From NCBI GenBank assembly GCA_907165135.1, contig OU015568.1:12462001-12526000 (forward strand): a stretch of 64,000 bases of DNA, in the 5' to 3' direction. Below are positions 873 through 30,508 of this stretch, in pieces (the first letter of the stretch is position 1; every line of letters starts with the position of its first letter). Both the position numbers and the translations under genes were made by a program. The stretch is from Oikopleura dioica. Taxonomy: Eukaryota; Animalia; Chordata. Under the pieces are notes generated by a model, which ran no database searches, was not told where the DNA came from, and saw only the letters and a list, made by a program, of their open reading frames with translations.

Positions 873-2516
873 ATGATGCGCCTTGCCCTAGAAATGTATT
901 CATTGGGACTTGTTGGAGGCAGTCAGGCAAACGATATCGCGCTGTTAGAGCCACCGAAAGAAACTCAAAGTGTGACAGAGACTGTGAGAGTGCCAAGTGC
1001 GGATTACATCGCTGAAATTATCGGGAAAGGAGGTTATTTCGGTCAAGCGTTTATTAACAACGAAAAACCATATATTCTAGGCATGAAAATCAAATATCTT
1101 CGACAGAAGACCAAAACGTACATCAAGACGCCAAGTCGATTTGAAAAGCCAGAATTCGTCATAACAGGTAATCCGATCACTAAAGTATATAAACCGACAT
1201 TGAATCTTAGGCCGGAAAGAAGATGTCGCTAAGGCAGCAACAGAGATTCGGGAAGCGGTTGAACATTTCAATGCCGTTCGTGCTGCTCGCTATTCGCAGC
1301 GTTTTAATCCTGAACCCTCGGAAGACGCCATCACTATCAAAGTAAGGTCAAAGTAGATTACATCTATGATCCCTAATGAAACCCAGGTTCGCGTGCCATA
1401 CAAAGTTGTCGGTCTGGTAGTCGGCGTCGGAGGAACTACCATCAAGAAAATCCAGCAGCAAACTCGCACTCACATTGCGACGCCAAGTCGCACAGGCGAG
1501 CCGATTTTCCTCGTCACTGGATTGCCAGAAAACGTCGAACTCGCCAAGCAAGAGATTGAAGAGTACATCGATGCAAAAACGGAAAATTCTAAGATCGACC
1601 GAGACCTTGATTTCGCAGCGAATGGCGTTGAAATTGGCGATGATGGAAAGACGGAGAATTCTGTGTAAGAACTTTTTGACAACAACAACGATGACAGAGA
1701 TCTTTCAGATTCGGTGATTCTTCATCTACAGCTCAGGAGCGGGCTTTCAAGGCTCTTCAACAATTGAGCTCTCTTTCAATCAGCATGAGGGAAAAAGTCC
1801 ACGAATACCTAGAAAAGTAATAATGCCCCTTTTTTACGTAATTTACGATCCAATTTAGCTTAAACAGAAGCTCCATCGGAAAAACTCATTTCGATCTTTA
1901 CAAGAATTCTTTGAACCCAATTTTGAACACACCAATCGTTGTACCAGAGGAGAAACAAATCGTCGTTAACCTCAACGTACCGTTTTTATAAATAATAAAG
2001 GAATAAATAACTTTAGGAGCTCGGAATTGACCTCAACAAAGACTTCCGCAGCAAGAAAAATTAGATGAGTTCAAAATAACCGCGGAAAACTCGTCTCTTA
2101 ATCCAACTGCAGCGGCGTTTACTCCGAAATCGGCGAAGATTATTGCACCCATTCAGAGCTCACCAAATGCAAAAGTCGCTAAATCGCCGAGTCACCACAA
2201 ATCTCCGAAGAACTTGCAGAAGATTTTAGGAAGCGATGGAATCTACATTCAAACGAAACCACTTGCAAAACCTCGCTCGACCCGCGATTTGCGCAACTTT
2301 CCGTATGGATTGGCTGAAAAACAGGCTGTTACCGGCAATAGTGGTGCAAGTCTGACAAGTCTTCTTCCAAGAAAACTCCCTTCATGTAACTGTCATTTAT
2401 TTTCTTATCAATTTGACTTTCCTTTTCTAGCTCCTTCGCCATCAGAAGATTCATTGTTCACTCTCGAGTCTGGATATGCAACTGAAGCTGGATTGCTCTC
2501 ACCGAAAATCGAGTGA
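873..2516 (+). CDS. MEX3: MEX3-like RNA-binding protein with two KH domains, multi-exon
   Basis: LRLALEM.SLGL N-terminal motif; KH1 [37 protein letters not shown]; KH2 VRVPYKVVGLVVGVGGTTIKKIQQQTRTHIATPSR. Short GT-AG introns join the ORF pieces. Confidence 0.9.
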
Positions 2517-2657
2517 TCTTCTGCAGAAAAAGTTAATTTTATAGCGAATTTCTATTTTGTACTACAGAGACTGGCTCGTTCCCGCTTACTGACACTAAAT
2601 TCATCCCTCGTTGCCGCCCAGTTAGAAAAATTTTAGCTCCCTTTTTTATCACATTTA

Positions 2658-3400
2658 TAGGGTTATAACTTATAAGATGAAAATTTGACCCGTTTTTCAA
2701 GCTTTGTTCAGGGGTCTTATGATACAGTTTTAGAAAGCTCAGAAGCTGAGCTTTCATTTGGGCTCAATTTCAAGTGGTCTGGGTCATGCCCGCAAGGCAA
2801 TTTATGGCACCGGAAGTTCTGAAATCAGCACTAGAGCTCTTCAATCGATTTTGGGTGCCGGGGTTCACTCGAAATGGCTCGAAAGTAGTCGCGTTAGAAA
2901 GCTCATCGTCTAAACTTACTGAAAAGCCAATATAATACTGCTGACTTGCCACCTACCGGCCTCTAGGGGCGCTAGAAACTCGATTTTCGCCCCGGAAATG
3001 GGATTTGTTGCACTAGAATTTGCCAATTTGGTAGAAATTTCAGGCTTATTATCGCGTTTCCTACCTAAAAATTCGTAAAATTTACTATTCTAGCGCCTCT
3101 AGCGGCCACTAGGTTGCGAGTCAGCAGTATTTTATTGGATTTTCAGAAAGCTTAGACGATGAGCTTTCTAAAACGCCTGCTTTCAAGCCATTTCGAGTGA
3201 ACCCCGGCACCCAAAATCGATTGAAGAGCTCTTGTGCCGATTTCAGAACTTCCGGTGTCATAAATTGCCTTGCGGGCATGACCCAGACCACTTGAAATTG
3301 TGCCCAAATGAAAGCTCAGCTTTTGAGCTTTCTAAAACTGTATCATAAGACCCCTAAACAAAGCTAGAAGAACGGGTCAAGTTTTCATCTTATAACCCTA
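2658..3400. mobile_element. Non-autonomous foldback/MITE, hAT-like (8-bp TSD)
   Basis: Inverted arms 2658-2977 and 3088-3400 starting TAGGGTTATAA; direct repeat CACATTTA at 2650-2657 and 3401-3408. Confidence 0.9.
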
Positions 3401-4950
3401 CACATTTATCATTTTCAAGCCAATTCTTATTTTTATACCTGAAAGTCTTAGAATCTAATAAATACACTGAAAAATTGAAGGCGCCATATATTTTTCTGTA
3501 ATGCAACAAACACATCCCATCAAAGAAAATAAGCATGTCAGGGTTTCTTTGTCTCGATGAAATGAATTTAACTTGATTTTGTGTAAATGCAGGCTTTCCA
3601 GCAGTTTTGCGTGAAGAGAATGAGGGTTACCGACGTCGATATAAACCGATTTTATCAAAATTATTATAGACTACCCCATTCCACCTTGTCGGAGTTAGAA
3701 AAAGCCGATCCTATTAATTCCTTCTTTGGCCTACCAATTGGTAATAGAACATAGTAATACTAAGAAAGTTATATTAAAAAAGGTGCCCAACTGATTGTGT
3801 ATGGTGCAATTTTGTTGGTTGTTGGCTGGATCGCGACTTTCTGGAAGCAACTTTGCGGCATTGTGAGAATATTATCCTTAAAATACTACAAAGTGAATTA
3901 CTACTGTAAGTGAATTATAGCCTCCAGAAACTCAAGATCGTGATTGTGACGATTGCTGTCTGATCCGTCCAGGAATCGAAGCTTCAGCCTGAAATATTTG
4001 GAAGAAGAACAATAAAATATAAATTTCTAATGTCAAGTCAGGAGTCTTACTTCTTAGAAAAATCTCTTATAGAAATCTGAGGGTTAAGAAGAAAGACACT
4101 GTACAAATCTAAATAACCTTGCTAAACTAGACTAGTCTTTGCAGGTGGAAGAGCTTAAAAATACCGTCACTCAGAGTTAAATTGGGTTGACTCGATTTAT
4201 GAACTTTCAAAGACATTTATATTTGCTTACATCCTTTTTAAATACTCTGACATTTCTCTTTAGCGTTTCTTTGGGTGGCGGGAAACCGCGAGCTAAACGC
4301 TGGAGCGAGAAGAAGCCGCGATTTCGGAGGCATGAAGTTGAACTTCGGCCAAAGTTAGGCGATTCACGCGGAATTCAAAAGTTATCAAAAGAGTTTACGT
4401 ACCAGTTACTGTGTTAAAGATTTTTGAAAGATAAAAAAAAATATTAAGTTTTTGATCTTAAAAAACTTCCGTAAATAATAGTCACGCCTAAAATTCTGAA
4501 GTTATATTCTAATTAATTTTTTCAGCATAAATCAATATTTAATTATTTTGTAGAAACTGATGAGCCTAGGTTTGAATTCGTTTTCCCTTTTTTCTTGCGT
4601 CTGTTGCGGTCTTGGTTGAGCTGCGCTCTTTGGTCCTACTTCCGAGCTCTTGGTTCCAGCGAGACGAGTGTGAGCATCTCGTGCCGCGTAGATTAGAAGC
4701 AATCCCGGTTCACGACCTTTCTAACGCCGCCTAGCGAGCATCTTGAGCACTCACGATTTCTTGTTTGTTCATTCATAAAGAAACTTTCTTGAGAAAAGAA
4801 TATGCTTGGAGGAAAAAGACTTTTGTCAGTTTTTCTTGCGCTCGCTTTTGGAAAGAAAACTTTTGAGAGCTCAAAATCACAAATTCAAGGAAAAGTTATT
4901 TATATCCCATCTGTTTTATTTTTGGAAATGTAAAATAACCTCAAAAAGAC

Positions 4951-5519
4951 TTGAAGAAGAAGACAGTGAAATGGTGTTCCGAGTACATGCCAGAACGATT
5001 CAGTGGAGATGAATTGCACAAGAAGACTTGCTCGAATCGATTCAACAAGTTTTACGGTAAGTTAATCGCTAATTTTCAGACTTGCGAAAGAAGAAAGCAA
5101 AAGGAAGCGACGAACACAACGAGGAGAAGAAGGCAGGCGCAGGATGCCGAGTTCGAGCACTCGCTATTTTCAGGAACGTTTAGAGAGAAGTAAAGCTAAT
5201 CACTTGAAGCATCTCCTGAAAACTGTAAAGTCACCTCTGAAAACCCGCAACCAAGAGCAAGAAAACGCTACCGAAAGAATTTCGACCTCGACGACGGTCC
5301 ATCCATTCTCGCGAAAGTCGGATTTTCCTTAACCTTTCTTTTCTAACGAAAATATACTAGTTTGGTCGAAGAACGAATCGTTTTATCATTCAAGAGATGG
5401 ACGGCTGCAAACGGGGACCGATGTACAAGAAAATCTTCACGAACGTGATTGAGCGCTTCCGAAATAAGCAGAAGATTATCCGCCGTCGCCAAGACCGTCT
5501 CGCCAAGAAGCAAGATTGA
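4951..5519 (+). CDS. Uncharacterised basic protein, probably multi-exon; structure uncertain
   Basis: Coding-like segments ending FGRRTNRFIIQEMDGCKRGPMYKKIFTNVIERFRNKQKIIRRRQDRLAKKQD*, with plausible splice sites. No family recognised. Confidence 0.35.
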
Positions 5520-24940: not shown

Positions 24941-27503
24941 ATGACCCAAGGAGTTGGAAAAAACGGAAATATAAATGGCCAAGTTGCGCTACCCGTTGTA
25001 GAGGTACACAAGAAGCCACCCTGTAGATTCATCTCAAAGGTAAGAATTGCTGTTTTTGATAGATATTTGTGGAAATAAAGTAGGATGGGATTAAGTTGTA
25101 AATTCCAAATTTACCTGGCTCGTGAAATAAATCTAATTACCTCGGAATTAGCAGAGAGTCGATAGACTCAATTTTGCTTGGTGTAATCAATTTTAGTACA
25201 AGGTACGTCTGGTACGTCGTTATAACGCCAGATTTATGTCGTAAATTTTGAGAGAATCTGACGATTTTCCGAATAGATTCAGGATCCAACTAGATCCGGA
25301 ATTGCGGGTCATTCTTGAATTTTGATAATGATAAAGTTCACGAGTTGGAAGTCGTATTTCAAACAAAAACGCCTCGCCAGCACGTTATTACGTGAATTTC
25401 CAATTGTCCTTTAGCGTGGACAAACAGTACAAGAACACGCGATTGACAGTTGTAATTCATAGAAAAAGCAAATATCAAACAGTCGAAATAAAGGAAACAA
25501 AGTGCCCTTCACTAGTTTAGACATAAAATAACTCAAAATTCGGTATTTGGGAATTTCTTTCTAATGGATCATTTCTAGTCGGGTCGGTGCTCGATTGAAA
25601 ACTTGAACCAGCCACCATGGTTCTTTCGCTACATGGCAGATCCGCTGACGACCTGCATCGACTTGCGCTGGAGATATACGCTATTGATATTTGTGTTTCT
25701 ATACGTAGCTAGTTGGATGGTCTTCGCCGTTGTATATTACATTATTTCACTCATTCACGAAGATTTTCCATGGCAGGTTCCTTCCAACGCTGTGAGTAAG
25801 TATTTTTTCACTGTAATTACAATAGGGGAGTACAGTAACGAGACTTATTTCAGACTATACCAGTTGGCTGAACACCTGCGAGACACTTACAAATAACACG
25901 TGCGGAAACGAGACATTACTGGCATGCGCTAGCGACGAGTGCAGTCTACTAGAAGACTGCAGTAGCTGTCTGTCAGACGCGATCGAATGCGTGCGCAAAA
26001 TGAACGAGTACGAGGCCGCGGCGGGCGAGGATACTTGCTTCTCCGATATCAAAGATTTCACTTCCGCCGTATTATTCAGGTACTTTCCCACATCTTTAAG
26101 GAGGTAGATATCAAGAATAGGCATTTTCTGTCAGACTTTTCTCCCAAAGTTAAAATAATGACACCCTTATTTTACTTTGGAAACAAAAACTTTGAACCTT
26201 TCTTTATTTCCTATGGAAGCCGAAATTTCGATTTTCAAGAAAATTTTTAACAAAATTTTTCGTCAAAGATCGCTGACTTTCCGAAAATGGGCTTTTTGAC
26301 CACAATCGGAGGTGCCAGATTTGCATTGTAGCACCTCGAAAGCTCAAGAAATCCTAATTTTTGGCTTCCATAGGAAAGAGATAATTATCTGAAATAAATT
26401 TTGAGCAGAAAATAAGGGGGTCACTTTGTTAAAAATTTGAGAAAACACTGACAAGAAATCCGATTCTTGATATCTACCCCCTTAAGCCCGATACAGTAAC
26501 TGTTCAGTTATGAAACGCAAACAACTATCGGCTACGGTGGCCGACATCCAACAGAAAAGTGTCCCTCGGCAGTTTTCGCCGTCATGGTCCAATCCGTCCT
26601 GTCAACGATTATCGACGCTTTCGCCATCGGTTGGATCATCGCGAAAATTTCTCGGCCAAAAAAGAGAGCAGAGGTTCTATCCCTTCAGTTTCCCTGTTCT
26701 AAGAAATATTCAAGACGCTGCTGTTTTCGAACAAAGCAGTTATCAACATGCGCGACGGAAAGTTGTGCCTAATGGTTCGCGTTGGAAACTTGCGAAAATC
26801 GGTGCTGGTAGAAGCGAATATCAGAATGCAACTGGTGAGATCGCGGACGACTGAAGAAGGAGAACACATTCCTTTTGAACAAATTGATCTCGACATCGAC
26901 CTTGGGAATGATTCGGAGACGATATTCCTTGTCACGCCTCAAATTATCGTGCATCCGATTGAGGAAGACTCCGTAAGTGGAATCTTAATTTACTCCTTTT
27001 TACGGAAGATGTTAGCTTTTAGTCGCTATTTAATCATATTTTGAGTCCTTGTTGATTCCATTTTTAAGCCACTGTATGACATCGGCCCCGACGATTTGAA
27101 CAGCGACGCGTTTGAAGTGATCATCATCCTTGAAGGAATGGTCGAAGCCACTGGAGGCACAACTCAAGCTCGAGCGAGCTACATGCCAAACGAAATCGAG
27201 TGGGGCAACCGCTTCAAAAACGTCGTAACACGAGGACAGAAGGAAAAAGGTGAGCCCAGCTCAAGGGACTTTTCTTAATTGGCGTCTTTTAAGGTTACCT
27301 GATCAACTTCTCGCATTTTCACGAAACGTACCCGACCAAAAATCCGCCAAAATGCTCCGCCAAAGAAATGGATGAACTAGAAAACGCCGATAGTAGCGAC
27401 ATCTTTGCCGTAAGCAATCATCATCCTTTATGAATAATTTCGACAGTTATTATTTTAGATTGAAAAAAGTATAGAAAACGTGACCTCCACTAGCAGCAAC
27501 TGA
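24941..27503 (+). CDS. KCNJ: Inward-rectifier potassium channel, Kir2-like
   Basis: CRFISK-SGRC N-terminus; TTCIDLRWR; pore [18 protein letters not shown]; M2 IIDAF; [10 protein letters not shown]; LVEA; [16 protein letters not shown]. Confidence 0.95.
26100..26481. mobile_element. Intronic palindromic MITE with TTAA TSD (Kolobok-like termini)
   Basis: TTAA|GGAGGTAGATATCAAGAAT ... ATTCTTGATATCTACCCCC|TTAA, with an inner inverted TTCCTATGGAAGCC/GGCTTCCATAGGAA. Confidence 0.85.
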
Positions 27504-28280: not shown

Positions 28281-30508
28281 ATGGATGATTATAATGGCGT
28301 TGATAGATTGCTATTCTTCGAGCAGTATTTAAAGAGATTGAGGTTTGTTCCTGTCATCTTATGAGCCCTTCATTGAGATGTTTTTCTAGGTCAGAGAAAG
28401 AAGACTTCTTCAAGGAAACCTTGGAGCGTCTTCTTTCGACAACATTGGAGCTCCCGTTTGTGGAAGAATGCCGCAAACTGTACATAAAAGAGCGGAAACC
28501 GAAAAAGTCAGGAAAGTGCTTCGGTGCGCCGCTGAATATGTACCAGTTTGAGCGGCTAGATCCGCTGATTCAAACGATCAGGATCGATATCCACAAAGAA
28601 GGCCTATTCAGGTACCGTTTGTTACCTCCTCTCATTTTCCCTAAGAAATAACACTTTTCAAAGAAAAGCCAAAATCTAAGGTTTATTTTGTAGAAAGCCA
28701 GGAGCAACGGCAAGAAAAAAAGAGCTTCGAAGAATTCTCGACTCGGGCGAAAAACCTCCAACGGAAATCAACGTCAACGACGCTTGCGACTTGATCAAGA
28801 TCTTCTTCCGCGAGTTGCCGCAGAACGTTTTTCCGGAGGAGCACTTTGCGACGCACATTTCCATCTCGGACATGAACCACGCCGATGGAACTGAGGACAA
28901 GCGGCGGCGGATTCAAACGCTCCAGGCGCTCTATCTCTGCCTGCCTGATGTAAACCGCATCGCGATTCGCATCCTGCTGCAGTTGTTGCACTCGACAGCG
29001 CGGCGACAGGAGGAGAATAAAATGTCGGCATCCTCGTTGGCGACGATCTTCCTTCCCGCCCTTCTTCCACAGGTGGTCGAACATGGCTCCTCGGCTGGAA
29101 TCACGAAGCTCTCACATCACATCACCTTCATGATTCGACACGCCAGGAAGATTATCATGCCGCCGATAGAGATCGTCAATCTAGTTCAAAAGTTCTACCC
29201 GGATTGTCTTAAAAACATGCCTCCTGCACCTCCAGCTTCTGGCAAAAGCAGACCAGGCGCAAAGGTAAAGCCTACATGAACTCCCTTTTCACTTACTTGT
29301 GTTTTCAGAAAACACTTTCTACCCGTCTAAAAGACTCAATCGTCAACTTTGTATCTCCAAAGAAAGGGCGCCGGGCGCCGATTCGCGATGCAAATTCTAT
29401 CTCTCATACGCTTCTTTTCCGCTCAGGCTCGGCCGATTGGACCAGTAGTCCCAAAGCGTTAGATCGACAGTGTCGCTCGAAGAGTGAGAAGATCCTCAAC
29501 AGGAAGAGCATCTTTGGTTCAAGAAGCGACATCGCTGATAGTGATGAATTGCCCTCGACCAGCACAACCGCCAATAGCGAGTATTCGAAATTCCGAGAGA
29601 TGCATAGGTATCAGCTTATTCCATTCTCCCGATTTCTAATGAATCTTTTAGCAAAGAAACGGCTTCCATGGGTTCTATGGCTAGTCTTCTTTCATCTGCA
29701 GCTTCCAACGATATTTTCGACGAGGCCAAGGCCGATTGCATCAGCCGAGCCTCGATCGACTACGCCGAGAAAAGCCAAGACGAGCTTCTCTCCGAAGAGC
29801 CAACAGAAGAGCCACAAATGAACGAGGAATCTAAGATCTCAGAAGAATCCACGGAAGACTACCACTCTGCCTCTGTCGACGAAATCCTCGACGAAGACAA
29901 TCCGGACGAGTCGAGCGAGCACTCTCCATCTGTTACCAATCCTCAAATTCCTTCCTCGACAAGCGGAAGTCTCATTTCCAAGAAACCCTCGGCCTCGTCT
30001 CTCTCGCAGTACGAAGAGAGCACGACGAAATCGTCAATGAAGGAGTGTCTTGACGAATCTACCTTAGAAGCCCCGGATATAAGAATCACTTCGATCGCTG
30101 ACTTGGTCAGGATGCGACAACAACACAAAGGTAAACAAATGCGATTTTTCTTCATTACCTCTTTCTAGCCGAGAGCTCCTCTCGACGCGTTCTAGAGCCA
30201 GTGTCCGAGAATAGCCCGTCTCGTTACTCGCCCAAGCCTTCCATGAAACGAGAAAGCCCGACGCATCCAAATGTCCAGCGAGAGCAAAAGCTGCAGAAGA
30301 CAGAAGAGAAGACAACTGTCACCCTTCCTCGACCGAGTAAGAATCTCTTTCAATTCCCTCAGCTCATTTTTTCATTTCAGTTGTGCGTGCTAGAAACTCG
30401 CCTGGCTTGTCTTCCTACCGCCGCGACTTGCGCCGTAACTCGTCAACGCGCATGGGTCCGTTGGCGGCCATGTCCATCCGCCAAGTCAAGAAGGAAACTA
30501 TTTTATAA
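28281..30508 (+). CDS. ARHGAP19: RhoGAP, ARHGAP19-like, with Ser-rich C-terminal tail
   Basis: FGAPL..EGLFR-KPG (arginine finger), NDACDLIKIFFRELP, QALYLCLPDVNRIAIRILLQLLHSTA..QEENKMSASSLATIF. Confidence 0.8.

What the first reader, a model, noticed from the sequence alone, without database searches (positions are those of the whole stretch)
25770..26040. Kir2-like channel with a ~60-residue, seven-cysteine extracellular turret insertion
Seen: between M1 and the conserved pre-pore Cys the spliced frame reads [89 protein letters not shown]. That is 74 aa versus ~12 in Kir2.1, with 7 extra Cys and three N-glycosylation sequons (NYT, NNT, NET). This frame is absent from the ORF track. The GYG filter and the rectification residues (IIDAF, LVEA, ILEG) are intact, so the channel looks functional. 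Inference: a disulfide-bonded extracellular cap, analogous to K2P caps, which I do not know from characterised Kir channels. The odd Cys count allows inter-subunit bridges, and it could be a ligand, redox or toxin-shield module.
Basis: partly seen in the sequence, partly recalled or inferred. Interest (0 to 1): 0.75.

Follow-up and report, generated by a model that had tools for sequence, protein, structure and literature searches.

The report
Kir channel with cysteine-rich outer crown
A potassium channel gene of the planktonic tunicate Oikopleura dioica carries a real, transcribed, conserved extra domain of about 60 residues, rich in cysteines and acidic residues, on the outside mouth of its pore; sea squirt and vertebrate versions lack it and its function is untested.

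Summary
The window is Oikopleura dioica OKI2018_I69. It holds an 8-exon Kir2-type gene (CDS 24941-27503, + strand). Its M1-to-pore loop is 71 residues, against 9-20 in ascidian and vertebrate Kir2-like proteins. The loop has 7 extra Cys and 3 N-glycosylation sequons.

Intron-less marine metatranscriptome contigs from sibling lineages carry the insert, so it is in mature mRNA. Skipping the exon would break the frame and remove the pore-helix start.

The insert occurs in 13 sequences that form one clade (100/100). Eight have 7 extra Cys with fixed spacing and five have 5, so the count is odd in both groups. All carry a loop net charge of -8 to -11. Non-synonymous change is well below synonymous change (pN 0.14-0.18, pS 0.75-0.86), yet the insert evolves about 6 times faster than the channel core.

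AlphaFold2 predicts a small helical domain (pLDDT 73-87 within the full-length model). It has no Pfam or PDB fold match, and only 4 relatives among 1.84 billion representative proteins.

A K2P-like cap and inter-subunit disulfides remain untested. My reading: a lineage-specific, disulfide-stapled, acidic, glycosylated extracellular crown on a Kir2 channel. It is a new variant of a known kind. This scan had not noted it before on other DNA.

The parts
24941..25039 (+). Exon 1: start codon and N-terminus ([33 protein letters not shown])
   Evidence: ORF list. 100% tblastn match of P0012 residues 1-33. Metatranscriptome contigs align up to 25039 and then jump to 25577.
25579..25795 (+). Exon 2: N-terminal part, M1 helix and the first residues of the long loop ([10 protein letters not shown]); phase-1 donor A|GTAAGT
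   Evidence: Pfam IRK E=4e-19, profile positions 5-69; translation.
25774..26035 (+). Coding span of the 71-residue turret loop (F96-T166), interrupted by the 58-bp intron 25796-25853. It holds 7 extra Cys and 3 sequons and has net charge -10.
25854..26079 (+). Exon 3: Cys-rich insert plus the canonical pre-pore Cys (TGC 26036-26038) and the pore-helix start ([14 protein letters not shown])
   Evidence: Single copy in the genome. No Pfam family. Only 4 relatives in 1.84e9 representatives. Present in spliced metatranscriptome contigs.
26080..26507 (+). Intron 3, almost entirely a ~391-bp palindromic MITE (TIRs 26096-26121 / 26460-26485)
   Evidence: The Norway orthologue has only about 45 bp here.
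26508..26673 (+). Exon 4: pore helix end, TIGYG filter, second canonical Cys (EKCPS), M2 with IIDAF, RPKKR
   Evidence: Pfam IRK E=6.5e-17, profile positions 93-141.
26674..26714 (+). 41-bp intron (GTTCTA...CAAG)
   Evidence: The reading frame KKRAE|[15 protein letters not shown] is restored only by removing it. The transcript alignment shows a 41-nt gap.
26715..26972 (+). Exon 5: cytoplasmic IRK_C domain, first half (includes LVEA)
   Evidence: Pfam IRK_C E=6e-31.
27069..27249 (+). Exon 6: IRK_C second part (includes ILEGMVEAT)
   Evidence: Pfam IRK_C E=1.2e-20; sequence at the donor.
27294..27409 (+). Exon 7: C-terminal part ([12 protein letters not shown]...DIFA)
   Evidence: matches P0012.
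27459..27503 (+). Exon 8: last 14 codons ([14 protein letters not shown]) and the TGA stop

Best explanation
This is the Oikopleura dioica orthologue of the tunicate/vertebrate Kir2-type strong inward rectifier. In the appendicularian lineage its M1-to-pore turret has grown by about 60 residues into a small, mostly helical, acidic, N-glycosylated, cysteine-rich extracellular domain. Shown: the exon is real, spliced into mRNA, single-copy, under purifying selection, and restricted to one clade. Also shown: the Cys pattern, one sequon and a net charge of about -10 per subunit are conserved, and the core channel motifs are intact. Inferred: the Cys form 3 intradomain disulfides (2 in the 5-Cys group) and leave one unpaired. 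Four copies would then form a rigid, negatively charged crown (about -40 per tetramer) around the outer pore mouth. Such a crown would raise the local cation concentration and change the access or block of external ions and peptides. The odd Cys may link subunits or a partner.
For: - Gene model and insert.
- Kir2 affinity: best PDB matches are Kir2.2 and Kir2.1 (E=5.5e-112). The alignment breaks exactly between query residues 95 and 164 of P0003, an orthologue 93% identical to the window's protein. Foldseek puts Kir2.2 on top.
- mRNA evidence: intron-less contigs L046-L050 (a Tara run and JGI samples) encode 432-434-aa proteins with the insert and align to the window exon by exon.
- Conservation: the Norway genome (L052) and metagenome contigs of a divergent species (L053-L056) keep Kir-then-RhoGAP synteny, and the two aligned here (L052, L053) keep all 8 Cys.
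- Selection: insert pN 0.14-0.18 against pS 0.75-0.86; core pN 0.025.
- Distribution: 13 insert-bearing sequences against 10 without. Loop length is 69-80 against 9-20 aa. Cys count is 7 or 5, and the spacing is fixed within each group.
- Single clade at 100/100 support.
- Net charge -8 to -11 in all 13 sequences, against 0 to -2.
- AF2: the insert has pLDDT 73-87 in the full-length model, with helices 107-115, 124-131 and 146-163.
- The two groups differ by exactly two Cys, as expected if Cys are gained or lost as disulfide pairs (inference).
Against: - There are no functional data of any kind.
- There is no RNA evidence from the Okinawa strain itself. The mRNA evidence comes from sibling lineages.
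- Disulfide pairing, quaternary arrangement and any effect on conduction are inferred only. The tools return no coordinates and no multimer model.
- The isolated domain folds with only middling confidence (pLDDT 68.8; three of the five models score 44-51).
- The insert evolves about 6 times faster than the core.
- Other O. dioica Kir paralogues carry unrelated long turrets, so part of the length may be tolerated rather than selected.
- The Norway annotation (P0011) models an insert-less form.
Confidence: 0.6

Rival explanations
1. The Cys-rich segment is removed by an alternative 3' splice site in the functional mRNA, so the working channel has an ordinary short turret. This is how the Norway annotation CBY08896 (P0011) models it: ...SNSV|DTCFSDI...
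For: P0011 lacks the segment. In the Norway DNA and in three other lineages, an in-frame AG (GAAG|AC or GAAG|AT) lies just before the canonical Cys codon.
Against: The window has GG, not AG, at that position. Its only in-frame internal AGs would leave ragged partial deletions. All full-length transcript-derived proteins seen (P0003, P0014, P0016, P0020 and P0025-P0034) contain the insert. The short-junction pattern was not found in the JGI contig collection, which holds at least four long-form contigs (a weak negative). Purifying selection and invariant Cys show that the segment is translated. P0011 also lacks the N-terminus, so it looks like a homology-guided model.
Confidence: 0.04
2. The domain is mainly a docking or assembly module. 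It would bind an extracellular partner (matrix, house component, auxiliary subunit or neighbouring cell) or control folding and ER export, and would leave permeation essentially unchanged.
For: Conserved sequons and a conserved unpaired Cys fit a partner-binding or quality-control role. In Kir2.1 the canonical extracellular disulfide is described as crucial for folding (abstract of PMC10274791, seen).
Against: No similarity to any known adhesion or binding domain: Pfam gave none, Foldseek gave no hit at E<=0.001, and VIA gave Z<=4.3. No partner is known. The conserved high negative charge right at the pore mouth is more simply read as electrostatic.
Confidence: 0.2
3. The insert is a redox or metal sensor. 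The unpaired Cys, four per tetramer, together with the acidic residues, would bind metal ions or respond to oxidants and so gate the channel from outside.
For: The Cys count is odd in both the 7-Cys and the 5-Cys groups. The loop is strongly acidic.
Against: Purely inferential. Odd parity could also reflect an inter-subunit bond or a buried free thiol. There are no His-rich or other metal-site motifs.
Confidence: 0.08
4. The insert is a largely neutral loop expansion. The Kir turret tolerates insertions in fast-evolving appendicularian genomes, and the Cys are kept only so that a long loop does not misfold.
For: Paralogues L040 and L045 have an unrelated, Cys-free long turret. The insert's dN is about 6 times that of the core.
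Against: Length, Cys spacing, one sequon and net charge are held constant across lineages whose synonymous sites are saturated. pN/pS is about 0.2.
Confidence: 0.08

Closest known systems
Kir2.x strong inward rectifiers (chicken Kir2.2, PDB 3JYC/3SPI; human Kir2.1, PDB 7ZDZ)
   Same: Same family and subfamily-level similarity. P0012 is 48% identical to Xenopus and Latimeria Kir2.2 over the alignment, and the Foldseek model alignment to chicken Kir2.2 shows 43-45% identity. It has the IRK and IRK_C domains, TIGYG, the canonical extracellular Cys pair, RPKKR, the M2 Asp (IIDAF) and the cytoplasmic Glu residues (LVEA, ILEG).
   Different: In Kir2.x the loop from HGD to the first canonical Cys is 11-12 residues with no extra Cys. 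Here it is 71 residues with 7 extra Cys, 3 sequons and net charge -10.
Ascidian Kir2-like channels (Ciona intestinalis, Phallusia mammillata, Styela clava, Clavelina lepadiformis predicted proteins)
   Same: Nearest named relatives outside the insert-bearing clade, at 50-52% identity, with the same core motifs.
   Different: Their turret is short (9-14 aa, 0 Cys) and they have long C-terminal tails. They fall on the other side of a 100/100 branch.
K2P (KCNK) extracellular cap
   Same: Same position in the subunit (first outer helix to first pore helix), similar length (about 60 residues according to PMC4436565), predicted helical, and involving Cys. The unpaired Cys here could play the part of the K2P apex Cys.
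   Different: K2P channels are dimers of two-pore subunits with one cap Cys per subunit. This is a 2TM/1P Kir that should form tetramers, with 7 extra Cys per subunit. No sequence or fold similarity to a K2P cap was found. Cap geometry is untested.
Cysteine-rich or extended S5-P turrets of Cav, Nav, NALCN and hERG channels
   Same: The general principle of a lengthened, sometimes disulfide-bridged, outer loop that reshapes the vestibule and drug or toxin access (PMC4436565).
   Different: These are different channel superfamily branches. No homology of the insert was detected, and this one sits in a Kir.

Membership tests
Inward rectifier K+ channel (Kir/IRK; Pfam PF01007 + PF17655) | IRK transmembrane domain and IRK_C cytoplasmic domain | tested here: met
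   Exons 2 and 4 hit PF01007 (E=4e-19 and 6.5e-17). Exons 5 and 6 hit PF17655 (E=6e-31 and 1.2e-20).
Inward rectifier K+ channel (Kir/IRK; Pfam PF01007 + PF17655) | K+ selectivity filter T-I-G-Y-G, with the conserved Glu of the pore helix and Arg after the filter | tested here: met
   [12 protein letters not shown] in exon 4. These columns are invariant in alignment A1.
Inward rectifier K+ channel (Kir/IRK; Pfam PF01007 + PF17655) | Canonical extracellular Cys pair (Kir2.1 C122/C154 equivalents) | tested here: met
   C167 (DTCFSD) and C199 (EKCPS) are invariant in all 23 aligned sequences. The bond itself was not tested.
Kir2 subfamily (strong rectifier) | M2 Asp (Kir2.1 D172) and cytoplasmic Glu residues (E224, E299); PIP2-site basic cluster | tested here: met
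   [18 protein letters not shown] and RPKKR are present. The residue numbering is from established knowledge of Kir2.1.
Kir2 subfamily (strong rectifier) | Closest similarity to Kir2.x among solved Kirs | tested here: met
   Kir2.2 E=5.5e-112 and Kir2.1 2.1e-107, against Kir3.2 1.9e-92 and Kir6.x about 1e-83.
Kir2 subfamily (strong rectifier) | Strong inward rectification of currents | not testable with these tools
   Needs electrophysiology.
K2P-type extracellular cap | Two-pore-domain (4TM/2P) subunit forming a dimer | tested here: not met
   There is a single pore domain between two TM helices, the Kir architecture.
K2P-type extracellular cap | Helical hairpin above the pore axis, closed by an inter-subunit disulfide, forcing lateral ion entry | not testable with these tools
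   Helices are predicted, but no multimer model or coordinates were available. No K2P chain appeared among the fold matches.
PSI (plexin-semaphorin-integrin) domain, a lead from memory because of ...[12 protein letters not shown]... | Match to Pfam PSI or to the PSI fold | tested here: not met
   No Pfam family at E<=1 for exon 3. There are no PSI chains among the Foldseek or VIA matches of the isolated-domain model.

The most novel reading that the evidence does not exclude
Appendicularian Kir2 channels have convergently evolved a K2P-like closed cap. Four acidic, disulfide-stapled helical domains would be cross-linked through the conserved odd cysteine, roofing the pore so that K+ enters through lateral portals. 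This would give a tetrameric Kir a new mode of extracellular gating or block protection. The Norway-type internal acceptor might allow the cap to be spliced out in some lineages.
Probability: 0.12. Interest if true: 0.8.

Novelty: new variant of a known kind. Interest (0 to 1): 0.55.

Why it matters
The outer vestibule of Kir channels is thought of as a short, conserved turret held by a single disulfide. It sets sensitivity to external cations, drugs and peptide toxins.

A natural Kir2 orthologue with a 60-residue, conserved, highly acidic, multi-disulfide domain grafted at that site is a ready-made experiment. It shows how much extracellular architecture a Kir pore tolerates, and it lets one ask whether surface charge or a cap changes conductance and block.

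It also adds a case of lineage-specific domain invention in the fast-evolving appendicularian genome. It corrects one public gene model: the Norway CBY08896 model omits the segment.

Tried and rejected
- **PSI-domain idea (from memory):** no Pfam hit and no fold match. Rejected.
- **Similarity of the insert to anything else:**
  - phmmer over 1.84e9 representatives found only 4 appendicularian-type fragments or proteins.
  - The ESM Atlas feature search gave no usable hit, and its structure rows are generic helical bundles.
  - The own-genome search found only the exon itself.
- **Exon skipping:** it would shift the frame (exon 2 ends in phase 1; exon 4 supplies one base) and would delete the pore-helix start. 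Rejected from the sequence itself.
- **Short isoform:** the internal acceptor of the Norway model is absent from the window. The junction pattern was not found in metagenome or metatranscriptome contigs.
- **Transcript evidence for the long-turret paralogue L040:** the metagenome-contig scan found nothing.
- **Paralogue turret lengths:** single-intron enumeration left several paralogues (L039, L044) ambiguous. Only L040 and L045 are supported, by cross-paralogue conservation.
- **Literature:** four searches found no description of a long Cys-rich Kir turret or of appendicularian Kir channels.
- **Survey of all animal Kirs for long turrets:** not possible, because the protein search lists only the best 120 hits.
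- **Joined spliced model:** I did not build the joined spliced protein for any search. Searches used single exons by reference and the database protein P0012, which the tools returned. One local script concatenated exons only to check the frame. It had an off-by-one error and was not used further.
- **Not human:** the contig is not human.

Full report
**What is in the window**

The window is G000:C1:12462001-12526000 of a 64.3-Mb, 19-contig assembly. The protein look-up identifies it as Oikopleura dioica OKI2018_I69. The gene is annotated there as Oidioi.mRNA.OKI2018_I69.PAR.g12020.t1 (CAG5088946.1, returned as P0012, 435 aa). The contig is not human.

Three-frame translation and exon-wise Pfam scans give an 8-exon Kir gene on the + strand:
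- Exon 1: 24941-25039.
- Exon 2: 25579-25795.
- Exon 3: 25854-26079.
- Exon 4: 26508-26673.
- Exon 5: 26715-26972.
- Exon 6: 27069-27249.
- Exon 7: 27294-27409.
- Exon 8: 27459-27503.

Exons 2 and 4 match Pfam IRK profile positions 5-69 and 93-141. Exons 5 and 6 match IRK_C. Exon 3 matches no Pfam family.

**Check of the observation**

Exon 2 ends [13 protein letters not shown] plus one base, before a GTAAGT donor. Exon 3 follows a TTTCAG acceptor. It encodes the Cys-rich stretch, the canonical pre-pore Cys and the start of the pore helix. Exon 4 begins [10 protein letters not shown]. P0012 has exactly this sequence.

I measured the loop from the invariant Asp of HxD to the canonical Cys:
- Here: 71 aa, 7 Cys, 3 sequons.
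- Ciona, Phallusia, Styela, Clavelina, an unnamed relative, Xenopus and Latimeria Kir2-like proteins: 9-20 aa, no Cys.

The filter, the M2 Asp, the cytoplasmic Glu residues and the RPKKR cluster are intact.

**Is the exon really used?**

Skipping exon 3 is impossible for a working channel. The phases do not match, and the exon carries the canonical Cys and the pore-helix start.

Proteins of 432-434 aa that contain the insert (P0003, P0014, P0016) lie on contigs of 1.7-1.9 kb. These come from JGI marine samples and a Tara run, ERR1719444. The contigs align to the window exon by exon with all introns absent. This includes the 58-bp intron inside the loop and the 41-bp intron after M2. They are therefore spliced mRNAs of sibling lineages, 93% identical in protein.

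The older Norway annotation (P0011, CBY08896, 324 aa) omits the segment (SNSV|DTCFSDI). The Norway genome itself contains the intact exon (L052). The short model uses an internal in-frame AG (GAAG|AC). That AG is present in the Norway DNA and in three other lineages, but not in the window, which has GAGG|AT. A search for the short junction in the JGI contig collection found nothing. This is a weak negative. I read the short form as a homology-guided model; a minor isoform in some lineages is not excluded.

**Conservation**

phmmer of exon 3 against 1.84 billion representative proteins found only four hits, at 76-81% and 50% identity. All are of this kind.

The 50% hit (P0004) lies on Tara and ENA metagenome contigs. 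On those contigs IRK, the Cys-rich exon, IRK_C and then a RhoGAP gene follow in the same order as in the window, and on the contig aligned here (L053) all 8 Cys are kept.

A full-length search with P0012 returned ten more unnamed proteins on short (1.6-2.1 kb) contigs, read here as transcripts, at 62-83% identity, then ascidian and vertebrate Kir2 proteins.

In the alignment:
- 13 sequences carry the insert.
- Eight have 7 extra Cys, with spacing C-x5-9-C-x7-C-x4-C-x5-C-x2-C-x6-C-x15-C(canonical).
- Five have 5 extra Cys, with spacing C-x6-C-x12-C-x7-11-C-x10-11-C-x15-C(canonical).
- The two groups differ by exactly two Cys, as expected if cysteines come and go as disulfide pairs. Both groups therefore keep an odd count.
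- One sequon just before the third Cys (N-x-T-L) is kept in all eight 7-Cys sequences.
- Loop net charge is -8 to -11 in all 13 sequences, against 0 to -2 in the ten proteins without the insert.

The 13 sequences form one clade with 100/100 support. The insert columns were part of that alignment, but core identity agrees with the grouping. The sources do not name the species behind the unnamed sequences. Calling them appendicularian is an inference from their similarity, tiny introns and synteny.

**Selection**

I made exon-wise codon comparisons of the window against the Norway genome, two transcript lineages and the divergent species:

| Region | pS | pN |
|---|---|---|
| Insert (three O. 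dioica-type lineages) | 0.75-0.86 | 0.14-0.18 |
| Channel core (three O. dioica-type lineages) | 0.61-0.63 | 0.025-0.028 |
| Insert (divergent species) | 0.95 | 0.36 |
| Channel core (divergent species) | 0.87 | 0.084 |

Synonymous sites are near saturation or saturated. The insert is under purifying selection, yet it evolves about six times faster than the rest of the channel. The Cys, the length and the charge are held.

**Structure**

AlphaFold2 with a 50-sequence alignment gives a Kir2.2-like model, and Foldseek's top hits are Kir2.2 entries (E=2.7e-34). In that model the insert has pLDDT 73-87 and is mostly helical: helices 107-115, 124-131 and 146-163, plus short turns.

The insert modelled alone reaches pLDDT 68.8. 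It has no Foldseek hit at E<=0.001 and no VIA match above Z 4.3. The ESM Atlas gives only generic helical look-alikes.

No coordinates or multimer models were available. Disulfide pairing and the arrangement over the pore are therefore unknown.

**How it most likely works**

By Kir topology the loop is extracellular, and conserved sequons agree with that. The best-supported reading is a compact, disulfide-stapled, glycosylated and strongly acidic domain. Four copies would ring the outer mouth of a Kir2-type pore.

The conserved charge (about -40 per tetramer) points to an electrostatic role. That role could be concentrating K+ or binding divalent cations in seawater. A rigid crown would also alter access for blockers and toxins. 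The conserved unpaired Cys could link subunits or a partner. These functional steps are inference.

The rivals are a docking or folding module, a redox or metal sensor, a tolerated neutral expansion, and a spliced-out segment. They are listed separately with their tests.

**Comparison and novelty**

Membership in the Kir family and Kir2-level similarity are met on every sequence feature tested. Rectification itself is untested.

The insert works, at most, like a K2P cap or like the extended Cys-rich turrets of Cav, Nav and NALCN channels (PMC4436565). It is not a member of those families: this is a one-pore-domain Kir and shows no fold similarity to them.

Four literature searches found no description of such a Kir turret or of appendicularian Kir channels. 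The gene model itself is public. I class the finding as a new variant of a known kind.

**Limits**

- There is no RNA evidence from the Okinawa strain itself.
- No survey of all animal Kirs for long turrets was possible.
- No profile search with the insert alone was possible.
- Searches were run exon by exon and with database proteins. The joined spliced model was not built for any search. One local frame-check script concatenated exons and was not used further.

**Seen in passing**

- Intron 3 is a MITE.
- Paralogues L040 and L045 share an unrelated, Cys-free long turret.
- Another paralogue (L043) has about 4.2 kb between its M1 and pore exons.

Noticed in passing
window 26080-26507 (TIRs 26096-26121 / 26460-26485): Intron 3 of the Kir gene is almost entirely a ~391-bp palindromic MITE with TTAA at both ends. 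At least 40 near-full-length copies at 80-97% identity lie elsewhere in the genome. The Norway orthologue has only a ~45-bp intron here, so the insertion is lineage-specific.
   Followed up: partly
L040 (G000:C1:5125500-5129000) and L045 (G000:C4:13882000-13888000): Two other O. dioica Kir paralogues share conserved in-frame sequence at both ends of the turret. It runs for at least 33 aa after the M1 'RGD' and for 22 aa before the canonical Cys. This is an unrelated, Cys-free long turret of at least about 55 aa, so turret expansion happened more than once in this genome. No transcript evidence was found.
   Followed up: partly
L045:3364-3444: The L045 paralogue shows an in-frame TAA inside M2 (MIL*CLAG). 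It may be a pseudogene, or the stop may lie at an unrecognised intron boundary.
   Followed up: no
L043 (G000:C5:6938500-6946500), about 1230-5518: In this Kir paralogue about 4.2 kb separates the M1 exon from the pore exon.
   Followed up: partly
L052:3124-3520 (Norway O. dioica, FN653033.1) and protein P0011: The public Norway gene model CBY08896/CBY33847 (UniRef E4XAY7) omits the Cys-rich segment and the N-terminus, although the genome encodes both. The model probably needs correcting.
   Followed up: yes
window 26674-26714: A very short (41-bp) intron with a weak GTTCTA donor lies between M2 and the cytoplasmic domain. Transcript alignments from sibling lineages confirm it.
   Followed up: yes
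window ~28790-29280 and onward (+ strand): A RhoGAP-domain gene lies directly downstream of the Kir gene. The Kir-then-RhoGAP order is kept in the Norway genome and in metagenome contigs of a divergent appendicularian-type species.
   Followed up: partly
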